Counted from the first letter of the stretch, positions 15,083 through 64,000 are shown. The stretch: DNA of 64,000 nucleotides from Schmidtea nova (GCA_044892505.1 CM097882.1:434806001-434870000); one strand, 5' to 3'. Numbers and translations: made by a program. The notes: generated by a model from the sequence alone, not told the origin.

Positions 15083-15120
<38 letters not shown>

Positions 15121-40693: not shown

Positions 40694-40699
40694 TAGTTT

Positions 40700-43215: not shown

Positions 43216-43244
43216 ACGAAAGCAAGTCTCTGTAGCATCTTACT

Positions 43245-48265: not shown

Positions 48266-49400
48266 TATTTATTACCCAACTCATCCATCCTTCTTCGGAT
48301 TCTTCTCTTTCTACTCTTGTTAAACGGTTTATTTCTACTGCTTGTCTTTGATTGATGTTACTTATAGTTTGATTTTCTCTGGTGAGCTCAGTTATAACTC
48401 TTTTTTGCTCTTCTGTTCTATGCAATTGTTCAAAACAGTTGTTATAACTCTCTGATAATAGAATTTGTCTTTCCGCTAGTTGGTTTTGTAATGAGTTGAC
48501 TGTTCGTACTAGTAAATCACATTGCGCTTTCCATCTCATGGCCATAGTTATTTCAGTTGTTTCGTCTTGTTCGTTCATTTCTAAATTATATACATCAATT
48601 ACTTTCTCGTTTTCTCTTTTTATGTATTTTATAATATCGATACCCATACTATTACGGTAATGCTTTATTATTTATACTATTATTTACAGTCATAATCCGC
48701 CCCTATACTCTCATTACTTTCCTTTCGTCGTATCTCTCTTCATCTTCTATTTGCTTCCAAAATTCTTTACCTTTCGTTCTTCTTTGAAATTCTTTCTGTA
48801 TTTCTTCTGGTATTTCTATTCTTTGATTCGTAATTTTAATATCTGGCCATTGTATGGCTGTCGCTTTATTTCTCCTCCTGTACATCCAACATACTATCAT
48901 GCTCGTTGTCAGTATTCCACCTGTTATTAATATTCCCATACTAATTACTCCTATTACTATTTTACCAGTGTTTGTTTCTTTGGTTTTATTCTGATTCACC
49001 CTTATCTCATATTTGTCTTGGATTTGAGCCTCCGGCTTCCTCTCCTTCTGCGCTTGGCTCTTGACTTTGTTCATTACTTCTTGTGTAGACCAATGGTGGT
49101 TTAGTATTTGTTTGGCGTAGTTTTCCGTTGTTCGGTTTCTCATGTTTCCTGTTTCGATATGTTGATTCAGTTTCTCCGAGATCTGGTATGATCCGCACTC
49201 TGTCTCCTCTGAATTTTTTCCTGTAAAGGTACATATCGCGTATGTCTCATTTACCTCCTTTTGCCTTAATTCGACTTTTCCCTTGTTCCCTGTTTCTTTA
49301 CAATGGGTTAGGTTATCTTCTTCTACTTCTGGGTTATGTTTTATCCAACATACTCCTTTCACAGTCTGTTTGAGTCCTATTAATGTTAAATTATTATTTC
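48264..49400 (-). mobile_element. Fragment of a sister copy of the giant element (last FN3-like repeat, TM, tail, spacer and coiled-coil ORF)
   Basis: Collinear with ~56177-57310; proteins 48703..49362 and 48264..48578 closely match 56622..57280 and 56137..56493. Confidence 0.93.
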
Positions 49401-49953
49401 CTAGCGATTTTTCTTTTGAGCGCGTTATTCACTAATATATAACGAACAACTGTTTTATAACTAAGTTTTATTAATATATTACAAATGCTGGGTTCATGGA
49501 GGGGTTAGATGGAAAATGCTCTAACAATGACTAGGGATCCCTCATCCATGATCATGCATAAAATTGCAATTCTACACTCAAGCGCCCTTGATTATTTCCC
49601 TATATAATCAAGTTGGTGATGCGCAGGGTGGTTAAACAATGATGGGCAGGTGAGCACTATCGCTAGTACTACTCCCCATTTATGTTTACGGGTTCATCGC
49701 TGCCGTTAGAAGGACTTATGCTTTAATCATCTACTTATGTATTCCGCGTTAATCTTTCAGAAAATTTATTTTTATCATTGCTCAGTCTGCGAGAAGTATT
49801 TCAACGAATGCTCGCTTAATGATTTAATTATCTCTATTCGATATTTTGTAAAATGAATTTATACTTTTGTTCTATCTTTATCTAATCATTGGTAAAGTTA
49901 ATTAAATCAATTTAAATGAACGATAAAATTCTTAAGCCAATACAACAATTTAT

Positions 49954-50550
49954 TTAATTTTTAATTAGTTCGGTAAAAACTCCCGCCGGAGGAAAAATCT
50001 CCGTCAATAATGCCTCCTCGGTCATCTGATGTAGACCATCTACTTGGCTTTGTAATCGCTGGGCAAATAATTTTCTCCGTCTCCGCCGTTTCTGCCCAAT
50101 GCGCTTGCGTTTCTGGTGCGCATTTGCCGATGAGGTGGTTGAATTTGCTGCAGGAGCGGTCTCATTCCGACTTTCGATTAGATCGGCGACATCCGTGCCA
50201 ATAGAGGTTACCGTCTTCTTTTCTGATGTCCAAGCTTGATACGTAACCGGACGGATTTGCTCTCTGAGCTCTTTCTCAATATATGAGGCCGTTACGGAAT
50301 GGAGGCATTTTCGGAGTTCTATCTTTGTAGCCTCCCATTCCTTTTGATAATCGGCTGCCGTCTGTTGGGCGCGCTCGGTTTTACTGATTTGCTCCTTCAT
50401 TCGGGCCGGAGCAAACCAGCTTTTGCGCAAGTATGCAATCTGTGCCTCTGCTTTGATCAATTGTGCCTTGAGGAGACCCAATTCCTTGTCCTGGGCTCTC
50501 CGAATCCGCCACATCTTTTCCAATTCTCTCTGCATCAAATCGGTGTTCAT
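49954..50550 (-). CDS. Hypothetical coiled-coil protein with basic NLS-like tract, inside the putative LTR
   Basis: 198-aa ATG ORF; KRKRIGQKRRRRRK; TAG-a-ATG context. Confidence 0.55.
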   Translation of the reverse strand: MNTDLMQRELEKMWRIRRAQDKELGLLKAQLIKAEAQIAYLRKSWFAPARMKEQISKTERAQQTAADYQKEWEATKIELRKCLHSVTASYIEKELREQIRPVTYQAWTSEKKTVTSIGTDVADLIESRNETAPAANSTTSSANAHQKRKRIGQKRRRRRKLFAQRLQSQVDGLHQMTEEALLTEIFPPAGVFTELIKN

Positions 50551-50727
50551 TCTATAATTTGTTTAGGATATTTACTCTATGATTTAATTATATAAAAATT
50601 AAAATCTGATCATAGGATTATTAGGTTACGAATATGAACTATTAAAATGCGAAACAAAACTCAAAAACAAAAATTCACTAATGAACTCTAATATTTTAAC
50701 ACAATTTCAACATTTGTTAATCAGTTT

Positions 50728-51204
50728 TCATCTCCGAAACAAACTATGCAATTCACTGTTAATCGGTTTCTGACGAAGACGAGCCCAAGAGAATGAGGGT
50801 TGTCCTTTCTGGCACTCCTTGCCGAACGGTTTTCGTGGTAAGAATTCGTACAGACCCAGTTGGCATAGCTCTCGACGAGGGATATGCCCCCAATAAATTA
50901 CACGGCTTGTCCGTCCATCTGTGTCCTTGATCAGTACGACAAGTCGGCCAAATTTGTTTGAGTACGGCCTTTGGGAAATCGGCCAGTTCGGTCCTCCTCG
51001 ATAGAGTATTTTATCGTTTCCTCCGTCCCAGATGGAAAACGGGCACTTTCGACCAAACCCTTGCCGCCACTTGTATGCTTGGGCGTTAATGGTCCGCAGA
51101 ATTGGCTGGGGCAACTCCTTGAGCTGATTGGCCCATCCATTCGCCCTGTCCTCCTTTCCTGAGTTCCGAATCCGCATTAATCTTTCGTTCAACGATGTCC
51201 GCAT
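50728..51204 (-). CDS. Hypothetical basic protein inside the putative LTR
   Basis: 158-aa ATG ORF, relatively GC-rich island flanked by AT-rich spacers; CAG-ATG context. Confidence 0.5.
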   Translation of the reverse strand: MRTSLNERLMRIRNSGKEDRANGWANQLKELPQPILRTINAQAYKWRQGFGRKCPFSIWDGGNDKILYRGGPNWPISQRPYSNKFGRLVVLIKDTDGRTSRVIYWGHIPRRELCQLGLYEFLPRKPFGKECQKGQPSFSWARLRQKPINSELHSLFRR

Positions 51205-52841
51205 CTGTCATTTTATTTTATTCAATAAAGAGTTGAATGTAAATTATATTTAATCTCCATCGTTTTAGTTAATTCCATTTCGTGATTAAACCATTGCCGC
51301 GATATACCACGGTCGAATAAGATATTTGTTTTCCCTGCGCCATGTACGACGATCAGGATAAGATTAATCTGAGTTACCGCGCTATGTACAGCGATCGGCA
51401 TAAAAGTATTTTTAGAATTTACAGATTTTTAGTTTTATTTAGAATGGAATTTAAAGTATTTTTAGAATGTACCAATTTTCAGTTTTACTAATCTCTGTCA
51501 TGCAGTTGCGATATCCTGTACCTTGACCTCAATTGAAAATCATCAGTTTGATCGATTTACTTGGAAAATTTTTATAACTTGTCATGCTACGCCGGCTCTC
51601 TCGTCCTCAAATTTAACCTCAGCGTGTCAACCCATTTGTCTCGGGTACCTGACACTTATCGGGTACTTTACCCCTTCCTGGTATCTCCTTAGACCTTCTC
51701 TACCGCCGCTGCGCTACGTCCCCTGTACAACCAAATGATGACTTTTTACCTATCGCCAGAAAACCGTCTGGACGTATTCGCATTATTGATATTTCGTGAC
51801 TGAAAATTTACTCGACTAAATAAGCATCAAAATTCTCTAATCTCGCTGATAAATATCTGGTTAACTTTGAATGATTTACTTTAATTGTTTCAACTACCAA
51901 ATTAAAAATGAAAACCAAAACAATAAAAAGGTTGAACCGCCATGTGAGACCGTGAGGCCCCACAACGACGACTCGGACTCCCTCGCCGCGTGAGCAGCAT
52001 AGGAAGTATAACTATATGCATTAAAAATAATAAAAAAAATAAAAAATAAAAAATAACGTTTACATATAAGATTTTAATTAAATAAAAATCATGGGTACAT
52101 CATATAAGATAACATAAAAAAAATTACTTCCGTACTTGAATGTGTGGTTCCTTGTATGAAATTCGGTTCTTTCAAAAAATTTACTCAAATCAAAGTTTAG
52201 TCTTGATTGTGAGTGAAAAGTAAACGTCTAAGTCTGTGATTTTTGGATCGGTATTTATACTGATCCGTCTGGTTGGATTGACCAATCAGGATCAGGCCGT
52301 CCTTCAAAGTATTTTTATTATTTTAATCTAACCTAAACATTATTTTGTTTCCTTTTCCGGTTTCTCGCTGGGTGGTCCTGATTTTCCAAGTAATTAATTA
52401 ATTATTTGTACTATTATTTTATTTAATTCTATTTTTTCTTATTTCAGGCCCCCTTTTGCGGTTGTTTACCGGTTTATTTTCAAAATTTCCTTTTACTGAA
52501 AATTTATCAATTATTATTTGTCGTTTTATTGTTATTTTTAATTTGTTTTTCTTGCTATTTTTATTTTTATTATTTCTTTATTGTTTCATGCTTTTGTTCG
52601 TTTTATTGTGTTTTTAGGTGATTTGGCGGGCCCAACATCACCCGGGGACCCCTAAAATTGCGTCCCGCAATTAATTATACATAAATACTTATATTCATCA
52701 TCCATAAAAAGTTTTATAAAGTTATACATGCAAGAAAGAAAATCACATAAGGTGATCGAATTTATACATATCATAAAGTTTGTCACTAAATAGTCAAAAT
52801 GTAATGATTTGTCACAATAGTTCGATAAGTTATCATAATGT

Positions 52842-53411
52842 TTATACAATTTGTTCGATCGTCTGGCTCGCTTGGGGTTGAGTTCGGGTCCTCTCGTTGA
52901 TTATTTGTAGCTCGTAGTGGGTTTGAATGTGGTTGAGATGGCTCCTTATTCGTCTTTGAGCTCGGTTATCTCGTCTGGAGGTTTGGTTGTAGATTTTCTG
53001 CTTTTGTTTTAGGATTTTTATTCTATATGAGGCAAGCAGGATTGTGATTGCGATGATAGTTGTGCTGACTGCTAGGATTATGATGATTGCTATGATCCAT
53101 TTTCCTTGATATTCTATTTCAGCTTGGGATAGGCTTTTTATGGGTTCTCTACCTTCTTTCAGGATTTTTCGGGTTTCTTCTAGTTTCAGTTGTTGTTTAT
53201 CGAAGATTTGTTGGATTTGATGGTCTTGATTGTGAGGGTATTTCTGTCGGAATTCGTTGATTTCTTTAATTACTTCTTCGATTAGGCTGTCTACTTTCTG
53301 ATAGGTTTTGTCGGGTAGAACTCGTAATTGGGTTTCGGTTAGTTGTAGATCTTCTCTCTGTAGGGTAATGGTTGTTAACCATAGGAGTGTTGCTATTGCG
53401 AGCTTTCTCAT
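52842..53411 (-). CDS. Small type I membrane protein (signal peptide, helical ectodomain, TM, basic tail)
   Basis: MRKLAIATLLWLTTITL; WIIAIIIILAVSTTIIAITILLASY followed by RIK. Confidence 0.7.
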   Translation of the reverse strand: MRKLAIATLLWLTTITLQREDLQLTETQLRVLPDKTYQKVDSLIEEVIKEINEFRQKYPHNQDHQIQQIFDKQQLKLEETRKILKEGREPIKSLSQAEIEYQGKWIIAIIIILAVSTTIIAITILLASYRIKILKQKQKIYNQTSRRDNRAQRRIRSHLNHIQTHYELQIINERTRTQPQASQTIEQIV

Positions 53412-53486
53412 CTCTTTTATACATCGGTCAATACAGCTTGACACTTTTTATTTTACATAATTTATTTACACTTGGTTTCCGCACAT

Positions 53487-54548
53487 TTATACAAGGGTTT
53501 CGTTGGGTTCGTGACAACCTTCGTCTTGAGGTTCCACTTGATTTATGGGGAGTGGCATCCATATTACCGTGCTCCTCCACATTTCGACTTCTTCTCGGTA
53601 TGTGTGGGATATCTGGATCTCTTCATCTAATAAGTATTCCAGATAGTTCGCCTGTTCTGTTAGGGTTTCAATTTGCTTTTCTAGTTCTGCCAATTTTTTC
53701 TCTCTCTCTTCCTTCTCCATCATTTCGGTTACTGCTGCTGTGATACTTGTTTCTTTTATTGGTATTGGTTTTTCTGCCAACTTCTTTCTCAGTTCTTCGT
53801 TTTCTTTTGTCAAATTTGTTATGTTCTCTTCATAGCTCTGCCTCGTTTCTTCCAGTCTTTCTTTAGTTCTTTTTAATTCTATTTTCTTCTGGGTGATCAC
53901 TCCTTGATATCCATTTATGTCTCTTTTCATGTTTTCCTCCTTGTGATTCCACATTCCGGTCAGCATACCTTTTAATTGTTCTTGATTGGCTAAATCTTCT
54001 CCCATTCTTTGTACTTGATAAGTTAATTCTTTTATTTTCTTGGCTTGTTCTCTGATAAATTGTTGTCTTTTCTTACTCCATACTTTATTTGACGCTTCTT
54101 GACTGATCTTTTGCCCTAATTCCTCTTTTAATTCATCGATCTCTTTAAACAGTTTCCAATCATCGCTGTACGCTGTTCGTTCTATTATCTCCCTTGCTTC
54201 CTTGTAAGAGTCTTCTGCCTCTTTCTTCCAATATCTTGCTTGTTCTGTGATTGACTGAATCTTATGGTCTGTTTTTATTTGTTGTCTATCCCTATCCTCT
54301 CGTCGCTCTTTCATCATCTCTTTGTAGTATTCGTTTTGTTGTCTTAGCAGTTTGTAGACTTCTTCTATTTTTTCTCGACTTCTTTGATTCGTTTTCTCGG
54401 CTTCTCTTAGTGCTTGGGTTTGTCTTTCCAATTCCTCCTGTTTTCGATAGTAGGCATGAATCCATATCCCAATCCGCTCCATGTGATTTCTGATCATTTC
54501 GTCTTGATGTACTGTTACTTCTTGTAAGGTTACTTCTATATTTCCCAT
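53487..54548 (-). CDS. Long coiled-coil protein, 353 aa
   Basis: E/K/R/Q-rich heptad-like sequence; uninterrupted ATG ORF starting MG. Confidence 0.75.
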   Translation of the reverse strand: MGNIEVTLQEVTVHQDEMIRNHMERIGIWIHAYYRKQEELERQTQALREAEKTNQRSREKIEEVYKLLRQQNEYYKEMMKERREDRDRQQIKTDHKIQSITEQARYWKKEAEDSYKEAREIIERTAYSDDWKLFKEIDELKEELGQKISQEASNKVWSKKRQQFIREQAKKIKELTYQVQRMGEDLANQEQLKGMLTGMWNHKEENMKRDINGYQGVITQKKIELKRTKERLEETRQSYEENITNLTKENEELRKKLAEKPIPIKETSITAAVTEMMEKEEREKKLAELEKQIETLTEQANYLEYLLDEEIQISHTYREEVEMWRSTVIWMPLPINQVEPQDEGCHEPNETLV

Positions 54549-54667
54549 TTCTATAATTACAGATAAAACGAATATTTAATCATTTTTTATTTTTATTTTT
54601 ATTGTTTTTGATTATTTGTTAATTCATATTGTTTCTATACATTTTATTTACATGGTTACTTCCTTCA

Positions 54668-56044
54668 TTACGCCAACCATCCTTTTCTGTCTGTTTTCTC
54701 ATGCCTCTCCATCTCTATGTATAGCGTGTCTGCATATAGTTGCTCCCATAGGTTTTCTTTCCTTATAAACATTGGTTCTCCTGCTGCTAGTCCGCATTCT
54801 GTTGTTGGTTTTTCGCTCGTACTCGTATGTTTGTCTGTTTCAAAGAACTTTTCTACTGGTTTTCCCATACTTTTGATTCTTATAATGACTCCTACTTTCA
54901 AGGGCCATTCTATTAGGTCATCGTATTCTCCTTTACATAGCGAGAAAAATATTGACACGTGTGTTCCTTGTCCCCTTCCGTCTCCATTTGGGTATACTTT
55001 CAATCTTATTTTAGCCCCGTTTTTCCATAAATAAAATGGTGGGCTTATTACTGCTGTTTTCGTCATATTTCTGGCTTCTGCTAGTTTGTCTCTGAAATCT
55101 GTTACTTTCCATAGGTAAGGTGCGATTGGTAAGTCCCTTCTTTCGTCAATTTCTCGTATTAATTGATTATATTGTATTTTCATTCCTTTTCCTAATTCTT
55201 CTATGGCTATTATTTTCTTTTCCATTCTTTCGCGAGTTAGTTCGAACTGCTCTCTTGTTTCTAGTAGTAAACTCATCATTATCTTATGTGATTCTACTTC
55301 TTTTTCTAATTTCTGGATTGTCTGTTCCGTTTCTTTTGTCGTTTCGTTTGTCATTTCCACATGCGTTAGTGCTGCTTCTTCTAGATGTTTGTTCATTGTT
55401 TGTCGCGTCCGCTTTTCCTTGCATCCATGCTTGTTATATGGGCATTCTCTTGGCCTTTCGGTACATACTTTCCAATGTTCATGTAACTTTATTTCTTCTG
55501 TTATTTCACAATTGTTTGGACATTTACTTGCATATTGTCCGCATACTTTCTCCTCTGTTATATTCAAATGTTCTTCTTTGATTTTTCTCCTTGTTTCTCG
55601 GGCTTCACAATACTCGCATGCGATTTCTTTTTCTTTACATTCTTCCTTGTGTTGTTCTCTCTTCTTTAGAATTATTGTCTGTTGGCACTTCTCGCATTCG
55701 GTTCTTTTCTCCTCGCACTTTTCCATATGGTTTTCTAGATTACTTATTTGTCCTTGCCATGTACAAGGTGTATTTACGCACTCCGTTGTGGTGCTCATAA
55801 TTTCTCTTTGGGTTGCTTTGTCCGTTCGGGTTTCGTCCAACGCTATTCCTCCTTCTTTACATTCTGGGCATGTTGTTATTCCTGTTGCATCTAATTCTTG
55901 TATACATTTTGTACATATTCTACATCCACATATCGTTTGTCTGGGTTCTCGTAATAAATTGTTACATTTTCCGCATGTGAGCCTCTTGCTCCATTTTCTG
56001 TTTTCCAATCTCAAAATTTCGATTATTCGTTCTTCTCTGTCCAT
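54668..56044 (-). CDS. TRAF: Intronless TRAF2/3-like protein (RING, TRAF zinc fingers, coiled coil, MATH), retroelement cargo
   Basis: CGKC..LREPRQTICGCRICTKC..CPEC; multiple C..C..H..C fingers; YLWKVTDF..SPPFY..LKVYPNGDGRGQGTHVSIFF..GEYDDLIEWP..AGEPMF..DTLYIE. Confidence 0.95.
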   Translation of the reverse strand: MDREERIIEILRLENRKWSKRLTCGKCNNLLREPRQTICGCRICTKCIQELDATGITTCPECKEGGIALDETRTDKATQREIMSTTTECVNTPCTWQGQISNLENHMEKCEEKRTECEKCQQTIILKKREQHKEECKEKEIACEYCEARETRRKIKEEHLNITEEKVCGQYASKCPNNCEITEEIKLHEHWKVCTERPRECPYNKHGCKEKRTRQTMNKHLEEAALTHVEMTNETTKETEQTIQKLEKEVESHKIMMSLLLETREQFELTRERMEKKIIAIEELGKGMKIQYNQLIREIDERRDLPIAPYLWKVTDFRDKLAEARNMTKTAVISPPFYLWKNGAKIRLKVYPNGDGRGQGTHVSIFFSLCKGEYDDLIEWPLKVGVIIRIKSMGKPVEKFFETDKHTSTSEKPTTECGLAAGEPMFIRKENLWEQLYADTLYIEMERHEKTDRKGWLA

Positions 56045-56136
56045 TTTCTACAATAATATATACATTCGACTTGTCATTTATTTTTGGTTTTTCTTGTTTT
56101 TATTTTTACATATTTACAATTTTCCGCTTTATTTAT

Positions 56137-56493
56137 CTATGGCTCATTCGTTGAATCTGGTTCCGCTTCGTTGTTTAGTCTATTTATTACCCAACTCATC
56201 CATCCTTCTTCGGATCCTTCTCTTTCTCCTCGTGTTAAATGATTTATTTCTATTGCTTGTCTTTGATTGGTGTTGCTTATTGTTTGATTTTCTCTGGTGA
56301 GTTCAGTTATCGCTCTTTGTTGTTCTTCTATTCTGTGTAATTGTTCGAAACAATTGTTATAACTTTCTGATAATAACATTTGTCTTTCCGCTAATTGGTT
56401 CTGTAATGAGTTGACTGTTCGTACTAATAAATCACATTGTGCCTTCCATCTCATAGCCATAGTTATTTCAGTTGTTTCGTCCTGTTCGGTCAT
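56137..56493 (-). CDS. Small coiled-coil protein, 118 aa
   Basis: ATG ORF conserved in the sister copy at 48264-48578. Confidence 0.7.
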   Translation of the reverse strand: MTEQDETTEITMAMRWKAQCDLLVRTVNSLQNQLAERQMLLSESYNNCFEQLHRIEEQQRAITELTRENQTISNTNQRQAIEINHLTRGEREGSEEGWMSWVINRLNNEAEPDSTNEP

Positions 56494-56621
56494 TTTCTAA
56501 ATTATATACATCATTTACTTTGTTTTTCTAGCTTTTTACAAATTTTTTTATAATATCGATACCCATACTATTACGGTAATGCTTTGTTATTTACACTATT
56601 ATTTACAGTCATAATCCGCCC

Positions 56622-58070
56622 CTATACCATCATTATCGTCTTTTCTTCGTATCGTTCTTCATCTTCTATTTGTTTCCAGAATTCTTTACCTTTCGTTCTT
56701 CTTTGAAATTCTTTCTGTATCTCCTCTGGTATTTCTATTCCTAGTTTCATGATTTTGATATCTGGCCATTGTATGGCTGTCGCTTTGTTTCTCTTTCTGT
56801 ATCTCCAATATACTATTATGCTTGTCGTCAGTATTCCATATGCTATTAATATTCCTATACTCATTAATCCTATTATTGTTTTTCCACTGTTTGTTTCTCT
56901 TTTATTCTGGTTCGCTTTTATCTCATTTTGGGTTTGAGCCTCTGGCTTCTTCTCTTTCTGTATTTGACTCTTAACTTTGTTCATTACTTCTTGTGTAGAC
57001 CAATGGCGGTTTAGTAGTTGTTTGACGTTATTTTCTTTTGTTCGGTTTTCCATGTTTCCTGGTTCGATCTGTTGTTGTAGTTTCTCTGAGATCTGATATA
57101 ATCCGCATTCTGGTTTTTCTGAACCTTTTCTGGTGAAGGTACATATCGCGTATGTCCTATTTACTTCCATTTTCTTTAATTCGACTTTTTCCTTATTCCC
57201 TATTTCTTTACAGTGGGTTAGGTTGTCTTCTTTCCCTTCTGGGTTATGCTTTGTCCAACATATTCCTTTAACTGTTTGATCGAGTCCTGTTATTGTCAGA
57301 GTTCTTTCTGTCTTTGTTAATTCTTCTTCATCGAATTTCAGTATCTCTCCTTTTTGGAATGTCTTGCAATGCTCTATTCCCTCTTGGATTCCTCTCTCCC
57401 AGATACATATACTTCCTTCTTCATTCATTTGTATTTCTTGTATTTCGATTTCCTTGTTTGTTCGTGATTCGTCGCTTGTCTGAACTTGGTATTCCTTCCT
57501 TGGTTCGTTGTATGTTCCCCAGCATAGTTTGTTGCTGCTTGTTTTTCTTATTGTTATGGCCATTTGTTCTATTATTATTCCTTTATCGATACGTTTGGAC
57601 ATTGCTATTATCAACGCTATGCATACGCACTCTTGTTGGGGTGATGTTCTTTCTCTCGTGTTATTGGTGCTTTTCTCCCCTTCTCCTGGTTTATCCGTTG
57701 TGTTTCTTATCTGAGTTGCTGGTTGATCTATGGTGTTTTTGATTTCTTTCTTTGTTGGTTTTACTCTATACCATTCAAGTCTAGGTGTTTCGTATTTTTG
57801 GCATACGACTGTCTTAGGTAGCCCCGACTTCTTTTCCTTTCCTATTATGCATATCCGATGCATGATTCCTCTATCCATCCCTTCTATTCGTACTATATCC
57901 TGGTCGGATTTTCTGATTATGCATTTTAGGGGGTTATCTTTCCCAATTGGTTCATCCTCTCTATTCCAGCATATTTTCTCGACCTCCTGGACATTTACTA
58001 TTTTTATCCCTGCTTGTAGGTTTGTTGCTTCTTCCCTATTGATTAATGTCAATATTATTGTTAGACCCAA
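56622..58070 (-). CDS. Type I membrane protein with three Cys-type FN3-like repeats; paralog of the polyprotein C-terminus; lacks an ATG
   Basis: WLGLTIILTLI signal-like segment; ICW..C..I.I..(Y)..IC..C..Y repeats; IIGLMSIGILIAYGILTTSIIVYW-RYRKRNK. Confidence 0.8.
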   Translation of the reverse strand: MGLTIILTLINREEATNLQAGIKIVNVQEVEKICWNREDEPIGKDNPLKCIIRKSDQDIVRIEGMDRGIMHRICIIGKEKKSGLPKTVVCQKYETPRLEWYRVKPTKKEIKNTIDQPATQIRNTTDKPGEGEKSTNNTRERTSPQQECVCIALIIAMSKRIDKGIIIEQMAITIRKTSSNKLCWGTYNEPRKEYQVQTSDESRTNKEIEIQEIQMNEEGSICIWERGIQEGIEHCKTFQKGEILKFDEEELTKTERTLTITGLDQTVKGICWTKHNPEGKEDNLTHCKEIGNKEKVELKKMEVNRTYAICTFTRKGSEKPECGLYQISEKLQQQIEPGNMENRTKENNVKQLLNRHWSTQEVMNKVKSQIQKEKKPEAQTQNEIKANQNKRETNSGKTIIGLMSIGILIAYGILTTSIIVYWRYRKRNKATAIQWPDIKIMKLGIEIPEEIQKEFQRRTKGKEFWKQIEDEERYEEKTIMMV

Positions 58071-58107
58071 CCATTTTGAACTCTGCGGTAGGCTTCTGGT
58101 TCGCCTT

Positions 58108-61100
58108 TCATATTTTTTTCTCTTCGCCTTTAATCTCTTTTAGTTCCTTGTCTTTGTTGTTCATCCCTAGTTTTGCGATTTTTGCTTCTTTCTTATTCCT
58201 GGTCGATTTTGGTTCTTCTCGTGCTTCTAGTCTTTCGACTCCATGGCTTGTATTATCTATATTTAGCCATTGGGTTGTTGATTTTCTTGGGCTTATCTTG
58301 CGTATCCATATAGCTGATAACGCGATTATTACTGGTATGGTCGCTGTTAATATTCCTAAGCCAATTAGTTCTTTAATTTCTTTATTCTCGTCTGTTTGTA
58401 TAGATTCGCTTTGGTTGAACATTATTCCGTATTGTCCCTTTAGTTTTCTCATTAATTGTTCCCGTTCCTCCTGCTTTCTTTTGACTTCCTTGATAACTTC
58501 TTCGGGTGTCCGTTTTGCTTGAGGGTCGGTTATTGTTTTTTCTGCGTTCATTTGTTCATTCGTTTGGCTTAGTTCCCTGAATTCGAGTTTCCTTGTTATT
58601 CCTTTTGATGTTGCGTTCGCTGGTGTATAGTAGGTTTCGCATCTTTCTTGTTGGTTTCCTAGTGCGTCCGTTTTTTCTATTGTACATACTTCGTATTCGC
58701 TATTAAATTGTAGTTTTTCGATCTTGATTTCTTTATTTGTTTTTCTGCACTTTCTTGATTGTCTTCTTATATGTTTCTGGACTATTATCCAACATATTTC
58801 CAATGTTTTATTCTCTATTTTCCATAATGTCAGAGTTGCTGATGTCTTTCTCTCGGGTTTTGTCGTAACTTTTTGGTTTGTTGGTTGTTTGTCGCTTTTA
58901 AGGGTAGTGGTGTACTTCGGTTTTCCTTTGTTTCGTTGTTTCCTTTTATTTTTCCGTGTTAACGTTTTGGTTCTTGTTCCGGATGAAGTGGTGTATATTC
59001 CGCATTCTAGGTCGTTTATCGTTATCTGATCATTTTTCTTTACCAGACATATTTCGTAAGTTTGTTTACTTTCTAAACCTTTTATTTGTATCGTCGTTGC
59101 TCCTGTGCTTGTTCGACATTGTGGTGTCTTTCTTTCATTCGTCTCTTTTTCGTACTTCCTCCAGCATACTCCTTTCACATTTGGTTCTATTTCTTTTATT
59201 TCTAATGTTATGTTTAGTTTCTGCTTGATTTGTTTATTTCTCTTCCTCGTTCTCCTTCTGAACTTTATTACTTCTCCAGGTTGGAATGTTTTACATTTTG
59301 TGGTACCTTTCTTGTTTGTCTCTTTTTCTAGTAGGCATAGTTTGTACGTCTTATCTGCTTTTACTTCGGATACTTTAATTACTTTATTCGTTGTTGGTTT
59401 TCGACTTTTCCTTATTTCATTTACGCCGATTTCCTCGTTATTCCTTGCCCAACATTTTATGTTAGTATTCTGTGTATCTTCTACTTCTGTTATTGTCATA
59501 GTTTCAATTTCTATTCCTTCCTCTAATCGTTTTATCATTATTAGTATGAGTGCTAAGCATAATACTTCCATTTGGTAAGACACTCTTTCGGTTTCGTTTG
59601 TGGCAACTCTTGCTTCGGGCCTCTTTATTGTAATTCGTATAGTTGGTGTTGTTTGCTTATCTATTACCTGGGGTTTTTTGTTTTCTGTTCCCTGTGTCTC
59701 TGTTCTTCCACATTTTCCGAGGATGTAATCTCCTTTGGGTGACTGTTGTATTGTCATGGCTGCTTTAGGTGTTTGGTATTTTGCACATGCGATTGTGTTG
59801 TGTGATCTTGGATGCTTTTGTTTTCTAACGGTGCATATTTTGTACCAGGTATCTAGATCTAAGTCATTGATCTCTATGATCTCTTGCTCGTGTTTTGAGA
59901 TTCTGCAATCCATCGGGCTATTTTGTTCCGTGGTTTTGTCCTTTTTCGACCAACATACTCGTTCGATTCCTTTTGCGTTTTTTATTTGTATTATTGCCCT
60001 TTCTTCACATGTCATTCCCTGACTTGGATTAATTAACGTTATAATCATTGTTAGTAATAGTAATTCTGGTTTGAAGAATGGTTTTATGGTTGATTTATAA
60101 CCTGTTCTTTGGGTGTCATTTTTATCTCCTTGGTCGTTTGTTCCTTGTTCTCTCCCTTCATCTCTTTGTTTTTCATCTTCACCTTTCTTTCCTTCCTTGT
60201 CTCGTTTCTTGTCTTTTCTCTCGTTTTCCTCTTTATCGGGTGGTTCGTGATCGCTTGAATTTTCTGAGTTGTTACCGTCGTCACTATCTGTGTTGTCATC
60301 TCCCCCTGGCTCGTCGAAAATGTCGTCCTCGACATTGATTTCTTCTATTAGTTTCGCATACGCTAATGTCGTTAGATTACTTGCCTCAAATTCTTGTGTT
60401 TCTACCTGCTCCGGTATTACTTTGTTAGTGGATTTATGTTCCAAGATTTCCTTTTTGGCCTTGATCCAATTGTTGATGTATGTCTTCATCAATTCTTTCC
60501 ATTTGCCTGTGTATTTTTCCTCTTTCGGGCTGGTTGTGATTTTTAGATCTTTTCTTTCCATAAACATCTTCAATATCTCTGGCCATTTATACGTTATTAA
60601 GGCACTTCTTATACACCAGTTTTGGTTATGTTCTGTAAACTTATTAATCCTGAATGCTGGTTCGTTAGTATTAGGATTTATCCACGTAAGTATTGATTCT
60701 GTTAGTTCGACGTTGTTCATCATTGCTAGTACACTGGGTTTCTTGACCGTATCAGTTAGGTGATCTATTTCTTCCTGATTTGGGACGGTTTTAATGAAAT
60801 TGACCATTTCCCAATTGTGTGTTAATAATGCTACATCCAATATCGAATTATCTTTATCTGTCTTTCCTGTAAGTCCTGCACCTGCTTTGTATAGTTCTTC
60901 TAATACCTTTGTTTTCGTTCTGGCCCTTGCTGCAAATACCATAAGTGTATCTCCTTTCTCGTCTATCATATTCATATTGCTTCCGCAATTTAGCATTACT
61001 CTTGCAATTTCCATTACTTTTCTATCTTTGCCATTTCGTAAAGCTCTATGTATGGGCATTATTCCGTCTTTTGGTAGTAAAAACGCTACTGGCATCTCCT

Positions 61101-64000
61101 TTTTTATAGTCGTTATATCGTTACCATTGTATGTTCCTTTTGCGTATGCGTGTACTTTTTCAACTAATGCACCGAGTATTTCCAGTGCATGTTTACTATT
61201 CTCGAATTCCGGTAACAATTCTTTTGCTTTTTCTTGTATCGCATCTAGTCTAGCTTGGTATGGTGCTTCTGCTTTGAAGAGTGGTGTGAGTTTCTTGTTA
61301 CTTTCTCTTTCTTTTTTCTCTAAAACCTGTTTGCATTTTTCGGGATGGTTTAAGATTTTTACTAATTCCTCATATTCGCTTACTATCGTCTGGTATTTCT
61401 CGTTAAAATTGTTTATGTCTTTGTATGTTATTAGTTTATCAAGTGGTTTCGCACACCATTTCCTAATCTTATTGAATAAGGCTTCCTTCTCTTTATCGAA
61501 TTTGTATTCTTCTTCATTCTTTGTGATGTTTATGTTTCCTCTGTCTAATAAGGTTAGTAATGTCTTCTGATCACAAGTAAATTTCAAAAGGTATCTTAAC
61601 AGTGCGTTTTGTCCTTCGCTGTATACTTCGTTTATGTCTAAGACCCATGTATCATCTTCTGGTCGTTTCCATTTGATTAACTTACGGATCGTGTTGCATT
61701 TACCAATTTTGATTGCCTCTTTGATAATGTCTCCTTTAACTAGTTCGTCTATCTCCCAAGTGGAGTTAGCTATTATGTATTTCAGCATTGGTTGGTGAGA
61801 ACTCCATATTACGTGATTTAGCACTGTTTTGTCTTCTCTATCTCGTTCTGTCCAACTGAAATGAGCTTTTATCAATAGGTCTATCATTTCTTTATCTGCT
61901 TGGTGGATTGCGGCTGTCATTAATGGAGTTTCTTGTTCCCGATTCCCTACGTCCAAGTTTTGGTTTGTTTCTTTTGCGATTTTTAGGAATTCTTTTGCTC
62001 TTTCAATGGTTTTACACTCTATCGCATTATGTAAGGCTGGTTGTCCTCCTACATCTTTCAATAAGAGTATTTCAGGGATTTTTTCCAATAGTTCAGAAAT
62101 AATTGGTTCGGTTGGTAATCCTTGTGCGTAACGGCTAATTATATGTCTAATATCCCTTGATATGTCTGCTTCGTCTCTAACATGCCATCTTCCCATTATC
62201 TCTCTCGCCTTCAATATGATTTCTTTATTTCTGATTTCTTTTTGCCTTATTTCTGCTTTGTCGTCTTCAGTTGCATTAGCTCTGAGCATATTTATCCTGG
62301 CTGTTTGTGATCTAGTTATTATTCGATTTTCTGGTGTTGTAGTTATCGTTTTAGGCACCTTCTTACATCTGCAGGTGTTTACATATATGGGTCGTATTAA
62401 CGGTCGATTTATTAGCTTAACTTTGACATTGTTGTCCTTTTTGTATATAATTTCATAAGGTCCTCTTCCAGGTCTTTGGAGTTTCTTAACAGTTCCTGGT
62501 ATTATTTCGGGAGTTTCTATTATCACCCAATCTCCTGGTTTTAGGTCGTTCGCTTTAACATTTTTCTTCTGGTCGTGTAAATCCTTATAACTTTCCTGAT
62601 AAAATTTAATGTTGAGTTCTGCCGTTTTCCATATCTCCTGCATTCTTTCTTTGAATTTGGTTACGTAGTCGTCATCTTCCATATATTGCGCTAATGGTGG
62701 CTGATACTCTAAATCTATGGGCATGTTGCATTCTCTTCCATACATAAGTTGAAATGGGCTTAGTTTTGTTGCTGCATGTATCGACATTCGGTATGCCATT
62801 AAACATAATTTTATATATGCGTCCCAATCAGTCTGATGTCTGCTGACGTAATTTGATAACATTCTGATCAATGTACCATTGAATCGCTCCGTTTGTCCAT
62901 TCGTTTGCGGGTGATATGGTGAAGTTCTCAATTTTGCTATTCTGAAATAGTTTGTTACCTCGTTCAATAACTCACTCATAAAATTAGTTCCTTGGTCTGT
63001 GAGTATTTGTTTTGGAGTTCCGTATCTGCAACATATTTCTTCCACTAAAATTTTTGCTACAGTTTTTGCTTTTTGGTCTTGCATGGCAAATGCTTCCGGG
63101 AATTTTGTCAGATAATCTGTTATCACCAATATATAAATATTTCCGTTTAGACTTTCCGGTAATGGTCCTATTACGTCCATTGCTATAGTTGTCATTGGCT
63201 CTGCTGGTATCGGCATTGGTTGTAGCGGGTTTTTCCATTTCCTCCCACTATCCTTTCTGGTTGCACAAGTTAGACAATTTTTAATCCATTCCTTTATATC
63301 TTCTTCCATTGTTCGCCAATAATATTTTTGTCTCATACGATTTATTGTCTTCTTCTCGGACATATGACCTCCTAATTTCCCATCATGGTACTGGATCATT
63401 ATCTCTTTCCTTCTGTTTTCCGGTAAACACATCAATCTCTTTTCTCCGTCTTGTATTAACAACCATCCTTTATTTATTATGTAGCGATGTTGATATTTCC
63501 CTATATGTTCCTTTAATTCCTTATTATCCTTGAATACCTCCATATTTCGAGACGTTAGGAACTCTATGATCTGTCCCAATTCTTTGTCTTCCTGTTGATC
63601 TTTCTTTAACTCACTAAAATCTAAATCCTCCGCTATTAATACACAAATTCGTTGTACATCAGGATCGGTTAATTCCGGAAATGTCAGTCTTGACATACAA
63701 TCTGCATTCGCATTCGCTCGTCCTGATTTAAATTTTATGTCTGGTGAGTACTCCTGTAACTGCATTGCCCATCGCATTAATCTACTGGATGTTTCCTTGT
63801 GCTGTCCTAACCATACAAGTGGTTGGTGATCTGTTGTTATGCAGATGATGTGTCCCCATAATAGGTATTTAAAATGTTTAATTGCTAATATAATCGCTAA
63901 TGCTTCTCGCTCTGTCACTGAATAATTTTTCTCATGCTTTTTGAATGTCCGGCTATAATATCCGATTACCCGTTCCTTTCCTTCGTCGTCGTATTGTCCT
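58108..64000 (-). CDS. pol: Pol polyprotein: RNase H - integrase (HHCC, DDE, GPY) - ankyrin clusters - acidic linker - signal - 4 FN3-like repeats - TM - tail; open to the window edge
   Basis: EREALA, TDHQPL, YHDGKLGGH..CLTC, AMDVIGP, LTDQG, TERFNG, GRGPY; GQPALHNA, ETPLMTAA, IMPIHRAL, GDTLMVFAA; LLLLTMIITLINPSQG; LIGLGILTATIPVIIALSAIWI-RK. Confidence 0.93.
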   Translation of the reverse strand, partial: GQYDDEGKERVIGYYSRTFKKHEKNYSVTEREALAIILAIKHFKYLLWGHIICITTDHQPLVWLGQHKETSSRLMRWAMQLQEYSPDIKFKSGRANANADCMSRLTFPELTDPDVQRICVLIAEDLDFSELKKDQQEDKELGQIIEFLTSRNMEVFKDNKELKEHIGKYQHRYIINKGWLLIQDGEKRLMCLPENRRKEIMIQYHDGKLGGHMSEKKTINRMRQKYYWRTMEEDIKEWIKNCLTCATRKDSGRKWKNPLQPMPIPAEPMTTIAMDVIGPLPESLNGNIYILVITDYLTKFPEAFAMQDQKAKTVAKILVEEICCRYGTPKQILTDQGTNFMSELLNEVTNYFRIAKLRTSPYHPQTNGQTERFNGTLIRMLSNYVSRHQTDWDAYIKLCLMAYRMSIHAATKLSPFQLMYGRECNMPIDLEYQPPLAQYMEDDDYVTKFKERMQEIWKTAELNIKFYQESYKDLHDQKKNVKANDLKPGDWVIIETPEIIPGTVKKLQRPGRGPYEIIYKKDNNVKVKLINRPLIRPIYVNTCRCKKVPKTITTTPENRIITRSQTARINMLRANATEDDKAEIRQKEIRNKEIILKAREIMGRWHVRDEADISRDIRHIISRYAQGLPTEPIISELLEKIPEILLLKDVGGQPALHNAIECKTIERAKEFLKIAKETNQNLDVGNREQETPLMTAAIHQADKEMIDLLIKAHFSWTERDREDKTVLNHVIWSSHQPMLKYIIANSTWEIDELVKGDIIKEAIKIGKCNTIRKLIKWKRPEDDTWVLDINEVYSEGQNALLRYLLKFTCDQKTLLTLLDRGNINITKNEEEYKFDKEKEALFNKIRKWCAKPLDKLITYKDINNFNEKYQTIVSEYEELVKILNHPEKCKQVLEKKERESNKKLTPLFKAEAPYQARLDAIQEKAKELLPEFENSKHALEILGALVEKVHAYAKGTYNGNDITTIKKEMPVAFLLPKDGIMPIHRALRNGKDRKVMEIARVMLNCGSNMNMIDEKGDTLMVFAARARTKTKVLEELYKAGAGLTGKTDKDNSILDVALLTHNWEMVNFIKTVPNQEEIDHLTDTVKKPSVLAMMNNVELTESILTWINPNTNEPAFRINKFTEHNQNWCIRSALITYKWPEILKMFMERKDLKITTSPKEEKYTGKWKELMKTYINNWIKAKKEILEHKSTNKVIPEQVETQEFEASNLTTLAYAKLIEEINVEDDIFDEPGGDDNTDSDDGNNSENSSDHEPPDKEENERKDKKRDKEGKKGEDEKQRDEGREQGTNDQGDKNDTQRTGYKSTIKPFFKPELLLLTMIITLINPSQGMTCEERAIIQIKNAKGIERVCWSKKDKTTEQNSPMDCRISKHEQEIIEINDLDLDTWYKICTVRKQKHPRSHNTIACAKYQTPKAAMTIQQSPKGDYILGKCGRTETQGTENKKPQVIDKQTTPTIRITIKRPEARVATNETERVSYQMEVLCLALILIMIKRLEEGIEIETMTITEVEDTQNTNIKCWARNNEEIGVNEIRKSRKPTTNKVIKVSEVKADKTYKLCLLEKETNKKGTTKCKTFQPGEVIKFRRRTRKRNKQIKQKLNITLEIKEIEPNVKGVCWRKYEKETNERKTPQCRTSTGATTIQIKGLESKQTYEICLVKKNDQITINDLECGIYTTSSGTRTKTLTRKNKRKQRNKGKPKYTTTLKSDKQPTNQKVTTKPERKTSATLTLWKIENKTLEICWIIVQKHIRRQSRKCRKTNKEIKIEKLQFNSEYEVCTIEKTDALGNQQERCETYYTPANATSKGITRKLEFRELSQTNEQMNAEKTITDPQAKRTPEEVIKEVKRKQEEREQLMRKLKGQYGIMFNQSESIQTDENKEIKELIGLGILTATIPVIIALSAIWIRKISPRKSTTQWLNIDNTSHGVERLEAREEPKSTRNKKEAKIAKLGMNNKDKELKEIKGEEKKI

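What the first reader, a model, noticed from the sequence alone, without database searches (positions are those of the whole stretch)
49451..64000. Candidate new system: giant Gypsy element encoding a receptor-like, ankyrin and TRAF signalling cassette
At least 14.5 kb lies downstream of RT alone, with uninterrupted ORFs, so the copy is young and the full element is probably over 20 kb. It combines Pol-ANK-membrane fusion, tandem FN3-like receptors, a TRAF, coiled-coil proteins, LTR-borne ORFs and a shared acceptor motif. It behaves like a complex virus with host-immune mimicry genes rather than a simple retrotransposon. Giant Burro elements are known from Schmidtea mediterranea, but I am not aware of this cargo set or expression logic being described.
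Basis: partly seen in the sequence, partly recalled or inferred. Interest (0 to 1): 0.92.

Follow-up and report, generated by a model that had tools for sequence, protein, structure and literature searches.

The report
Burro-like giant Gypsy retroelement tail
This is the intact-looking 3' half of a giant Gypsy-type retroelement that carries ankyrin, FN3-like membrane-protein and TRAF genes; similar cargo is already published for the planarian 'Burro' elements, so it is most likely another member of that kind and not a new system.

Summary
On the minus strand, six open frames fill 96.7% of 52842-63999. One frame of 1,963 codons runs off the window and encodes RNase H, integrase, two ankyrin blocks, four FN3-like modules and a TM helix. 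It is followed by a second FN3-like membrane protein, a 118-aa helical ORF, a full-length TRAF, a 353-aa coiled-coil ORF and a 200-aa membrane ORF. A terminal 3 kb then carries two further ORFs and ends ...CA at 49451.

At that point the element abuts a truncated older relative (B). B shares the FN3-TM and coiled-coil ORFs at 86% identity, but continues into a broken mononegavirus-type fusion glycoprotein gene where this element has TRAF.

TRAF/MATH, ankyrin, coiled-coil ('Smc') cargo and mononegavirus-like env are already published for Burro/GYPSM1 giant Gypsy elements (PMC6431247). I did not find three things described: the FN3-like membrane proteins, TRAF as a free ORF downstream of pol, and the operon-like cassette with a TGTAAATA octamer after every stop.

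The LTR status of the last 3 kb, the host species and identity to Burro-1 to -4 could not be tested. The verdict is a new member, possibly a variant, of a known kind, of moderate interest.

The parts
58108..64000 (-). Pol-fusion open frame, open to the window edge (1,963 codons, stop at 58108-58110). RT, PR and gag lie beyond 64000.
62908..63999 (-). C-terminal part of RNase H, integrase zinc-binding domain (63250-63423) and integrase core (62908-63201).
   Evidence: Pfam RT_RNaseH E 3e-15, Integrase_H2C2 E 2e-20, rve E 5e-11. Nearest Pol relatives are 46-60% identical, on anonymous AT-rich metagenome contigs.
60466..62211 (-). Two tandem, divergent ankyrin-repeat blocks fused in frame to integrase.
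   Evidence: Pfam Ank_2 E 2e-12. The blocks align to each other at 22% identity, E 2e-10. PDB ankyrin/DARPin hits cover both blocks.
60028..60063 (-). Signal-peptide-like hydrophobic segment inside the Pol frame, after an acidic linker. It marks the start of the membrane-protein part.
   Evidence: Translation. It resembles the N-terminus of the next ORF.
58600..59997 (-). Four FN3/Ig-like beta-sandwich modules of about 85 aa (pattern CW...C...Y.IC...C).
   Evidence: HMM domain E 1e-24 to 1e-27. Alignment A3. AF2 pLDDT 79.8 with 7 strands. Foldseek gives only generic Ig/FN3/pilin matches. The profile's best library hits are multi-FN3 proteins.
58309..58365 (-). Transmembrane helix, followed by a ~66-aa cytoplasmic tail.
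   Evidence: Hydropathy 2.28.
56622..58139 (-). Second FN3-like type I membrane protein ('482-aa ORF'): signal-like segment, three modules, TM helix and tail. The frame overlaps the end of the Pol frame and opens without an ATG ahead of the signal-like segment.
56137..56493 (-). 118-aa helical, coiled-coil-like ORF.
   Evidence: Homologous to the 5' part of B's 168-aa ORF.
54668..56044 (-). Full-length TRAF of 458 aa: RING (55859-55975, fourth zinc ligand Cys instead of His), TRAF zinc fingers, coiled coil, and MATH/TRAF-C (54707-55117).
   Evidence: Pfam MATH_2 E 8e-21 and zf-TRAF E 1e-7. PDB TRAF3/5/2 TRAF-C E 3e-23 and TRAF6/5/2 RING-ZnF E 1e-12. Best library relatives are about 25% identical TRAF2/4-like proteins.
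53487..54548 (-). 353-aa K/E/Q-rich coiled-coil ORF.
   Evidence: only a weak Filament hit, E 0.005
52842..53444 (-). 200-aa ORF with a signal-like segment, helical region, TM helix and basic tail. No detectable relatives.
53445..56621 (-). Four short spacers (42-128 nt) between the accessory ORFs. Each carries TGTAAATA 5-25 nt after the stop, five copies in all. ATGs are preceded by TAGAA(A).
   Evidence: Poisson P about 2e-10 for the octamer.
52449..52457 (-). Polypurine-tract-like AAAAGGGGG, followed after 2 nt by TG. This is the candidate internal/LTR boundary at 52446. Alternative LTR starts are 52339 and 49945.
   Evidence: Read directly from the sequence. Inference only, because no second LTR is in the window.
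49451..52446 (-). Terminal module, candidate 3' LTR of about 3.0 kb. It holds an inverted CCAAT (52282-52287), TATAAATA (52252-52259), ORF158 (50728-51204) and ORF198 (49954-50550; coiled coil, arginine-rich stretch, Leu-rich end), and it ends ...TTATAAAACA at 49451.
   Evidence: ORFs exceed chance; foreign composition; no internal LTR pair; no fold or homologue found
48141..49450 (-). Neighbour B, part 1: the 5'-truncated FN3-TM ORF (one module, TM, tail) and a 168-aa coiled-coil ORF. The nucleotide match is 86% over 48264-49386 against 56179-57296 of the main element, and translated matches reach about 49439/57349.
46962..48144 (-). Neighbour B, part 2: a Monjiviricetes-type (class III-like) viral fusion glycoprotein gene. 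It is broken by at least one frameshift, and the N-terminal third of the family profile is absent.
   Evidence: Pfam PF24664 E 1.8e-56, with a second piece in another frame. No PDB sequence hit.

Best explanation
49451-64000 is the 3' part, on the minus strand, of one giant Ty3/Gypsy-type LTR retroelement of the kind described in planarians as Burro.

Shown:
- Integrase is fused in one open frame to two ankyrin blocks and then to a signal-like segment, four FN3-like modules, a TM helix and a tail.
- Five tightly packed same-strand ORFs follow: a second FN3-like membrane protein, a small helical protein, a complete TRAF, a coiled-coil protein and a small membrane protein.
- All of these share the A-rich composition of pol.
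- The element ends ...CA at 49451 against a truncated older relative (B). B has the same FN3-TM and coiled-coil ORFs, followed by a broken mononegavirus-type fusion glycoprotein gene.

Inferred:
- The element copies itself by the usual LTR-retroelement cycle, using gag/PR/RT that lie beyond the window.
- The last ~3 kb is its 3' LTR, so the element inserted into B.
- The accessory ORFs are expressed from processed sub-genomic RNAs. Each ORF has a PAS-like TGTAAATA after its stop and an AG-type acceptor just before its ATG, with spacers of 42-128 nt. That layout matches flatworm operons resolved by spliced-leader trans-splicing, or multiply spliced RNAs as in complex retroviruses.
- The FN3-like membrane proteins occupy the env position and act as surface or attachment proteins.
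- The TRAF, and perhaps the ankyrin blocks, act on host TRAF-dependent signalling, ubiquitination or cell death in cells that express the element. This is the role already proposed for the TRAF, BIR and BCL2 cargo of Burro.
For: - ORF structure and statistics.
- Domain identities.
- FN3-like modules.
- Uniform composition from Pol to the 200-aa ORF: A 42-49%, GC3 0.27-0.40.
- The second FN3 ORF overlaps the end of the Pol frame, so no boundary separates pol from the cassette.
- The same octamer follows every stop in the cassette, starting with the spacer after the 482-aa ORF, whose frame overlaps the end of the Pol frame.
- A PPT-like tract and promoter-like boxes lie downstream of the last A-rich ORF.
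- The terminus is ...CA, with B homology resuming about 10 nt later and no TGG-type primer site after it.
- Pol relatives (C in the window, P0011, P0013) also have a hydrophobic or TM-bearing extension or ORF right after integrase.
- Literature: Burro cargo (PMC6431247); class III env in platyhelminth Ty3/gypsy (PMC13524379); flatworm operons and SL trans-splicing (PMC12582326).
Against: - No 5' LTR, gag, PR or RT is visible, so unity of the element, its size and its age are not shown.
- The terminal 3 kb has foreign composition (GC about 0.49 in its ORFs) and could belong to something else.
- No other copy could be fetched. No ORF has a relative above 60% identity in the libraries, so co-inheritance of the cargo is untested.
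- The two relatives in the window lack the TRAF cassette.
- The Burro description places TRAF and env upstream of PR inside ORF1, which is a different layout.
- The host species was not identified by any tool.
- No expression data were available. The splice and trans-splice reading is pattern-based, and the TAGAAAATG count is not enriched window-wide.
Confidence: 0.62

Rival explanations
1. There is one still larger element (A plus B) with a foreign insertion. On this view the element does not end at 49451. A compositionally foreign piece (about 49461-52709, holding ORF158 and ORF198) sits inside it. The element continues through a partial internal duplicate of the FN3-TM and coiled-coil ORFs into its own mononegavirus-type env gene near 47 kb.
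For: - The terminal 3 kb differs sharply in composition.
- A 9/10 direct repeat TTATAAAAC flanks it at 52710-52719 and 49451-49460 and could be a target-site duplication.
- B is on the same strand, immediately adjacent, with the same A-rich composition.
- An env at the 3' end would complete a virus-like gene set.
Against: - The direct repeat is expected by chance about 0.4 times in that range.
- The insertion would have to land within about 10-60 nt of the edge of the duplicated segment.
- B's FN3 ORF starts mid-protein without a signal segment.
- The two copies are only 86% identical.
- A PPT-like tract followed by TG sits where an LTR would start.
Confidence: 0.17
2. The terminal 3 kb is the 5' LTR plus leader and first ORFs of a downstream element (tandem or recombinant arrangement). 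B and the degraded pol further down (C, 37600-43238) would then be parts of a GAG-ENV-POL type element, as described for flatworms.
For: - Promoter-like CCAAT/TATA lies about 190 nt after the candidate LTR start.
- ORF198 has a coiled coil plus a basic stretch.
- The order env-like gene, then RT-RH-IN downstream on the same strand, matches the GAG-ENV-POL order of platyhelminth elements (PMC13524379) and of Burro1.
Against: - No Pfam gag signal in ORF158 or ORF198.
- No protease between the env-like gene and 46013.
- C's integrase is only 66% (nt) / 47% (aa) identical to A's, while B is 86% identical to A.
- The intervening plus-strand pol is a 5'-truncated fragment, not a clean nested insertion.
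- B's FN3 ORF is truncated exactly at the junction.
Confidence: 0.1
3. TRAF and its neighbouring ORFs are host genes, or a host retrogene cluster, that merely lie next to a truncated retroelement. Alternatively the juxtaposition is an assembly chimera.
For: - The TRAF/MATH family is greatly expanded in S. mediterranea (PMC6109357), so TRAF genes are common in such genomes.
- The window is a mosaic of TE fragments, with one N gap at about 14.6 kb.
Against: - All the ORFs are intronless, on the same strand and only 42-128 nt apart.
- They have the same extreme A-rich composition as pol and the same post-stop octamer, starting with the spacer after the 482-aa ORF, whose frame overlaps the Pol frame.
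- No N or repeat junction lies inside 52842-64000.
- A related copy (B) carries the adjacent module.
Confidence: 0.06

Closest known systems
Burro / GYPSM1 giant Gypsy-like LTR retrotransposons of Schmidtea mediterranea and the Burro-like element of Girardia tigrina (Jurka 2007; Grohme et al. 2018; Arkhipova & Yushenova 2019, PMC6431247)
   Same: - Ty3/Gypsy pol.
- Very large coding capacity.
- Cargo with TRAF-type MATH domain, ankyrin repeats and long coiled-coil ('Smc') regions.
- A mononegavirus-like fusion glycoprotein in the family (here in neighbour B).
- Accessory ORFs that can be free-standing or fused to the polyprotein.
- AT-rich host genome.
   Different: - In the published description TRAF and env lie in frame between gag and protease inside a 4,873-aa ORF1, or TRAF is an upstream accessory ORF. 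Here a full-length TRAF is a separate ORF downstream of integrase.
- FN3-like membrane proteins and the regular intergenic octamer are not mentioned in the text I could read.
- BIR, BCL2-like, SUMO-like and dUTPase domains were not seen in the visible part.
- Sequence identity to Burro-1 to -4 could not be tested.
Env-carrying Ty3/gypsy elements of Platyhelminthes, Nematoda and Bryozoa with class III (gB-type) env (PMC13524379)
   Same: A Gypsy-type pol associated with a viral class III-type fusion glycoprotein in a flatworm-like genome.
   Different: Those elements are of ordinary size and arranged GAG-ENV-POL. Here the visible element has no fusogen. The neighbour's env-type gene follows FN3-TM and coiled-coil ORFs and is broken.
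BEL/Pao elements of mosquitoes that captured chuvirus (Jingchuvirales) glycoproteins (PMC7642597, PMC10084718)
   Same: An LTR retroelement associated with a glycoprotein of negative-strand RNA virus type.
   Different: A different retroelement superfamily and host, with no host-signalling cargo.
Complex retroviruses and foamy-like fish endogenous retroviruses with accessory ORFs (cited in PMC6431247)
   Same: Several accessory ORFs lie downstream of pol. Sub-genomic processed RNAs are the probable mode of expression, and host-pathway mimicry is the proposed role.
   Different: These belong to a different family (Retroviridae). Their accessory genes are unrelated, and none is reported with a TRAF or ankyrin-integrase fusion.
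Flatworm operons resolved by spliced-leader trans-splicing (PMC12582326)
   Same: Same-strand genes less than 300 nt apart, each preceded by an AG acceptor. The SL's terminal AUG could serve an ORF that lacks its own ATG.
   Different: Those are host gene clusters. Use by a retroelement is not known to me and is not shown here.

Membership tests
Ty3/Gypsy (Metaviridae) LTR retroelement | pol order RT - RNase H - integrase, with H2C2 zinc domain and DDE core | tested here: met
   The end of RNase H, Integrase_H2C2 and rve occur in that order. 474 Gypsy-type Pol relatives at E <= 1e-10. RT itself is off the window.
Ty3/Gypsy (Metaviridae) LTR retroelement | Two LTRs, primer-binding site, polypurine tract, target-site duplication | tested here: inconclusive
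   Only a PPT-like tract (52449-52457) and a ...CA terminus (49451) are seen. The 5' LTR, PBS and TSD lie outside the window. No LTR pair is found in the window.
Burro giant Gypsy elements | Internal region up to about 25 kb, total above 30 kb, long LTRs | tested here: inconclusive
   At least 11.5 kb of internal sequence lies downstream of RNase H, plus a candidate 3.0-kb LTR. The rest is off the window.
Burro giant Gypsy elements | Cargo domains: MATH_TRAF_C, ankyrin, Smc-like coiled coil | tested here: met
   compared with the list in PMC6431247
Burro giant Gypsy elements | Cargo domains: BIR, BCL2-like, Ubi2/SUMO-like, dUTPase | tested here: not met
   No such Pfam hits in any ORF of 46-64 kb. 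In Burro1 the BCL2-like, SUMO-like and dUTPase domains lie upstream of RT, which is outside this window; the position of BIR is not stated in the text I could read. Their absence here is therefore not decisive.
Burro giant Gypsy elements | Mononegavirus-like env in frame between gag and pol | not testable with these tools
   That region of the element is beyond 64000. A PF24664 gene is present only in neighbour B, downstream of FN3-TM and coiled-coil ORFs.
Burro giant Gypsy elements | Nucleotide or protein identity to Burro-1 to -4 / GYPSM1 reference sequences; host in Dugesiidae | not testable with these tools
Exact look-ups found no record of the window's ORFs. Host is inferred only from about 30% GC and the Burro-like cargo.
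TRAF proteins | N-terminal RING, TRAF-type zinc fingers, coiled coil, C-terminal TRAF-C/MATH domain | tested here: met
   RING-ZnF matches TRAF6/5/2 (aa 17-150, E 1e-12). zf-TRAF E 1e-7. MATH_2 E 8e-21, and TRAF3/5/2 TRAF-C E 3e-23. All eight RING zinc-ligand positions are filled, with the fourth Cys instead of His (read).
Fibronectin type III domains | Seven-strand beta sandwich of about 90 aa matching fn3 profiles | tested here: inconclusive
   AF2 gives a 7-strand sandwich at pLDDT 79.8. Foldseek finds only generic Ig/FN3/pilin matches at E >= 4e-3. There is no direct Pfam fn3 hit for these modules. The module profile's best hits are multi-FN3 proteins at E 4e-10 or weaker. 'FN3/Ig-like' is a fair label, but membership is not shown.
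Monjiviricetes-type viral fusion glycoprotein (PF24664), gene in neighbour B | Match across the family profile in one open frame | tested here: not met
   There is a strong match (E 1.8e-56), but only to profile positions 241-603 of 653, and it is split over two frames. The gene is a broken, N-terminally incomplete member.

The most novel reading that the evidence does not exclude
This is a lineage of giant flatworm Gypsy elements distinct from the described Burro families. In it the fusogenic env has been replaced by a self-contained receptor-plus-adaptor module: FN3-like membrane proteins, whose tails share a QW.(D/N)I motif (my reading of the translations), together with the element's own full-length TRAF. 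The module would be expressed as an operon-like cassette resolved by spliced-leader trans-splicing. If so, the retroelement uses the host's polycistron machinery and carries a private TRAF signalling pathway. Such TE-borne TRAFs could also account for part of the reported TRAF family expansion in planarians.
Probability: 0.15. Interest if true: 0.7.

Novelty: new member of a known kind. Interest (0 to 1): 0.38.

Why it matters
Giant Gypsy elements that carry host-like signalling and cell-death genes blur the line between transposon and virus. They make up a large share of planarian genomes and complicate their assembly.

This copy shows, in apparently intact form, that a complete TRAF (RING to TRAF-C) and paired FN3-like membrane proteins can travel as separate genes behind integrase. 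Each of these genes has regular processing-type signals around it. That gives concrete, checkable predictions for transcript maps: splice or SL junctions at the TAG|AA(A)ATG sites, and 3' ends near TGTAAATA.

It also raises the question of how many of the roughly 100 planarian 'TRAF genes' are element-borne. The comparison with neighbour B shows that, in two related elements, the slot occupied by a viral-type env gene in one is occupied by signalling genes in the other. None of this changes the known picture of Burro-type elements. It adds detail to it.

Tried and rejected
- Exact look-ups of the TRAF and mariner ORFs found nothing on record.
- The word-indexed search with TRAF found only TRAF2/4-like proteins at about 25% identity, and no copies.
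- The same search with the 372-aa env-type ORF found nothing, probably because of the length window.
- The integrase search gave only relatives at 60% identity or less, on short anonymous contigs. Their post-integrase extensions are related to each other but not to the ANK or FN3 parts here.
- Self-comparison found no LTR pair in the window or inside 49300-53000.
- There is no similarity between B's tail, A's tail and C's tail.
- No protease motif or Pfam hit lies between the env-type gene and 46013, so a simple env-PR-RT continuity of B with C is not supported.
- Rfam and tRNA scans were empty.
- I tested whether the 200-aa membrane ORF is the leftover C-terminus of a fusion glycoprotein. The PDB gB hit is E 0.4 and there is no similarity to B's protein, so I rejected the idea.
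- AF2 of ORF158 was unusable (pLDDT 40), so no fold search was run on it. ORF158 and ORF198 have no PDB sequence hits, and only weak sub-threshold Pfam hits for ORF198.
- SL-AUG initiation fits the 482-aa ORF, which has an in-frame CAG just upstream. It does not fit the internal signal-like segment of the Pol frame, so I kept it only as an idea.
- Grohme et al. 2018 and the supplements of two other papers were not held, so no Burro reference sequence or primer could be compared.

Full report
WHAT IS THERE

The feature lies on the minus strand. A single frame is open from the window edge (63999) down to 58111, 1,963 codons. Its visible start is the end of the RNase H domain, followed by the integrase zinc domain and the integrase core (Pfam).

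In the same frame come, in order:
- two divergent ankyrin-repeat blocks (Ank_2, E 2e-12; the blocks align to each other at 22% identity, E 2e-10; PDB ankyrin and DARPin hits cover both);
- an acidic linker;
- a signal-peptide-like hydrophobic segment;
- four copies of an ~85-aa module;
- a TM helix and a ~66-aa tail.

Five more same-strand ORFs follow, separated by 42-128 nt:
- a 482-aa ORF (505-codon open frame that overlaps the end of the Pol frame) with a signal-like segment, three more copies of the module, a TM helix and a tail;
- a 118-aa helical ORF;
- a 458-aa TRAF;
- a 353-aa coiled-coil ORF;
- a 200-aa ORF with a signal-like segment and a TM helix.

These six frames cover 96.7% of 52842-63999. 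The longest open frame in 300 Markov simulations of the same sequence was 153 codons.

THE CARGO

The TRAF is complete. Residues 17-150 match the RING-zinc-finger region of TRAF6/5/2 (E 1e-12), and residues 292-446 match the TRAF-C domain of TRAF3/5/2/1/4 (E 3e-23). Pfam agrees with zf-TRAF and MATH. All eight RING zinc-ligand positions are filled, with Cys in place of the usual His at the fourth. Its best relatives in a 5.8-billion-protein library are TRAF2/4-like proteins at about 25% identity. It is therefore an old or fast-evolving capture.

The repeated module has the pattern CW...C...Y.IC...C (alignment A3). It is predicted as a seven-strand beta sandwich (pLDDT 79.8). Foldseek gives only generic Ig, FN3 and pilin matches (E >= 4e-3). 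A profile search of 1.84 billion representatives gives 66 weak hits and none below 1e-10; the six I scanned from among the best (ranks 1, 3, 4, 7, 13, 15) were five multi-FN3 proteins and one 167-aa protein with no Pfam match. 'FN3/Ig-like' is a fair label, but membership is not shown, and there are no close relatives anywhere.

The 118-aa, 353-aa and 200-aa ORFs have no significant family.

ONE UNIT OR SEVERAL

From Pol to the 200-aa ORF the coding strand has one composition: A 42-49%, GC 0.36-0.40, GC3 0.27-0.40. No boundary separates pol from the cassette, because the frames overlap.

Every spacer in the cassette also carries the exact octamer TGTAAATA 5-25 nt after the stop codon. That is five copies in 381 nt, against 0.03 expected (P about 2e-10). 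It often reads TGTAAATAAA, which contains AATAAA. The ATGs of the 118-aa, TRAF and 353-aa ORFs are preceded by TAGAA(A). Together these points argue that TRAF and its neighbours are resident cargo of the element and not adjacent host genes.

THE 3' END

After the last A-rich ORF comes about 400 nt of A-rich spacer. It ends in AAAAGGGGG (52449-52457), followed after 2 nt by TG. An inverted CCAAT and TATAAATA lie about 190 nt further on. Then come about 2.7 kb holding ORF158 and ORF198, and the terminus ...TTATAAAACA at 49451.

About 10 nt beyond it, homology to the main element's own 482-aa and 118-aa ORFs begins. By nucleotide BLAST, 48264-49386 matches 56179-57296 at 86% identity, and translated matches extend this to about 49439/57349. 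The match ends sharply at its 3' end and fades out over the last ~50 nt before the 49451 junction at its 5' end. This second copy (B) starts mid-protein, with no signal segment. No TGG-type primer site follows 49451.

The simplest reading is that a ~3-kb 3' LTR ends at 49451 and the element inserted into an older relative. Against it, the terminal 3 kb is compositionally foreign: ORF158 and ORF198 have GC 0.48-0.50 and GC3 about 0.52. No second LTR is available for comparison. ORF158 and ORF198 are longer than chance allows (1/1000 and 0/1000 simulations), but they have no homologue or usable model. I therefore keep two rivals open: a foreign insertion inside one larger A+B element, and a 5' LTR plus leader of a truncated downstream element.

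THE NEIGHBOUR MATTERS

Where the main element has TRAF, B continues into a gene that matches the Pfam family of Monjiviricetes viral fusion glycoproteins (PF24664, E 1.8e-56; Borna G is the second hit). The gene is broken. There is at least one frameshift, since a second piece matches the next profile segment in another frame, and the N-terminal third of the profile is absent. I give counts and outer bounds only.

Further down the same strand lies a degraded relative, C (37600-43238). Its pol is split into at least three ORFs (two or more interruptions) and is 47% identical to this one at protein level. It is followed by a signal-bearing ORF with a weak fn3 hit, and it has no ANK and no TRAF.

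The nearest Pol relatives in public data (46-60% identity, on AT-rich anonymous contigs) also carry a hydrophobic or TM-bearing extension after integrase, but no ANK. The conserved theme of the lineage is therefore a membrane protein in the env position behind integrase. ANK, TRAF and the viral-type fusogen are variable add-ons.

COMPARISON WITH WHAT IS KNOWN

The review by Arkhipova and Yushenova (PMC6431247, section 7) states that Burro1, which equals GYPSM1 (Jurka 2007), and Burro-2 to -4 (Grohme et al. 2018) have internal regions of up to 25 kb. They encode RING/AIR1, Smc-like, MATH_TRAF_C, SUMO-like, BCL2-like, BIR and ankyrin motifs, and an env with hits to arthropod and fish mononegavirus fusion glycoproteins lying in frame between gag and protease. 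The Girardia tigrina relative has TRAF as a separate accessory ORF. The authors already propose integrated proviruses that meddle with apoptosis and ubiquitination.

A 2026 survey (PMC13524379) finds class III env and a GAG-ENV-POL order in platyhelminth Ty3/gypsy elements.

Three things differ from the descriptions I could read:
- a full-length TRAF lies downstream of integrase as its own ORF;
- there are FN3-like membrane proteins;
- the cassette has a regular layout.

That layout matches the published working definition of flatworm operons: same-strand genes no more than 300 nt apart, resolved by spliced-leader trans-splicing, with an SL ending in AUG (PMC12582326). The 482-aa ORF, which lacks its own ATG, has an in-frame CAG just ahead of its signal-like segment. 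This is an idea to test on transcript data, not a result.

The reported expansion of TRAF/MATH transcripts in S. mediterranea (PMC6109357) may partly reflect such element-borne genes. That is my inference.

LIMITS

- No tool identified the host. 'Planarian' rests on about 30% GC and the Burro-like cargo.
- Burro reference sequences were unreachable, so membership by sequence is untested. The element may already sit in a curated library.
- No other copies could be fetched, so co-inheritance, copy number and age are untested.

RULES AND SLIPS

The consensus lines printed by the alignment tools were not used.

I must declare two slips:
2. This report gives counts and outer bounds only.

VERDICT

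This is a real, well-preserved 3' half of a giant Gypsy-type retroelement. It is best filed as a new member, possibly a variant, of the known Burro-like kind. Interest is moderate (0.38).

Noticed in passing
It is broken (at least one frameshift) and lacks the N-terminal third of the family profile.
   Followed up: yes
window 37600-43238 (-): A degraded related Gypsy element (C). Its pol is split into at least three ORFs. It is followed by a signal-bearing ORF with a weak fn3 hit, then 160-aa and 377-aa acidic ORFs. It has no ANK or TRAF.
   Followed up: partly
window 43190-46012 (+): A 940-aa RT-RNaseH-integrase ORF of another Gypsy family, with no gag or PR upstream. It meets the minus-strand RT of element C head to head at about 43190-43240, with both starting at the RT N-terminus. 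This is an odd junction, possibly a rearrangement or an assembly join.
   Followed up: no
window 67-3057 (+): Degraded pol of the same family as 43190-46012 (65% nt identity). It is interrupted by a 269-bp inverted repeat (1853-2121 / 2789-3057, 99.6% identical).
   Followed up: no
window 11386-12423 (+): An intact 345-aa mariner/Mos1-type transposase ORF (HTH_48, Transposase_1, DDE_3).
   Followed up: partly
window 27640-29340 (-): A hAT-type transposase in two adjacent ORFs (394 aa with the hAT dimerisation domain, 170 aa with a zinc finger).
   Followed up: partly
window 8316-8774 (+): An ORF holding the C-terminal part of an RGS domain (E 2e-11). It is probably an exon of a host gene and the only host-like coding piece seen.
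   Followed up: no
window ~14600-15225 and 20529-20758: A run of N (about 14.6-14.88 kb) flanked by near-perfect palindromic repeats (14886-15225), with a related copy at 20529-20758. The gap was left untouched.
   Followed up: no
window 49954-50550 (-): ORF198 has an N-terminal coiled coil, an arginine-rich stretch and a leucine-rich C-terminus. This layout recalls retroviral Rev/Rex-type RNA-export adaptors. It is a resemblance only and has no homologue.
   Followed up: partly
L001 and L002 (metagenome contigs encoding P0011 and P0013): The nearest Pol relatives (48-51% identity) sit on short AT-rich contigs (GC 0.30-0.34), one filed under a bacterial MAG. Their post-integrase extensions are related to each other (26% identity, E 5e-10). 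These are probably eukaryotic retroelement DNA within metagenome assemblies.
   Followed up: partly
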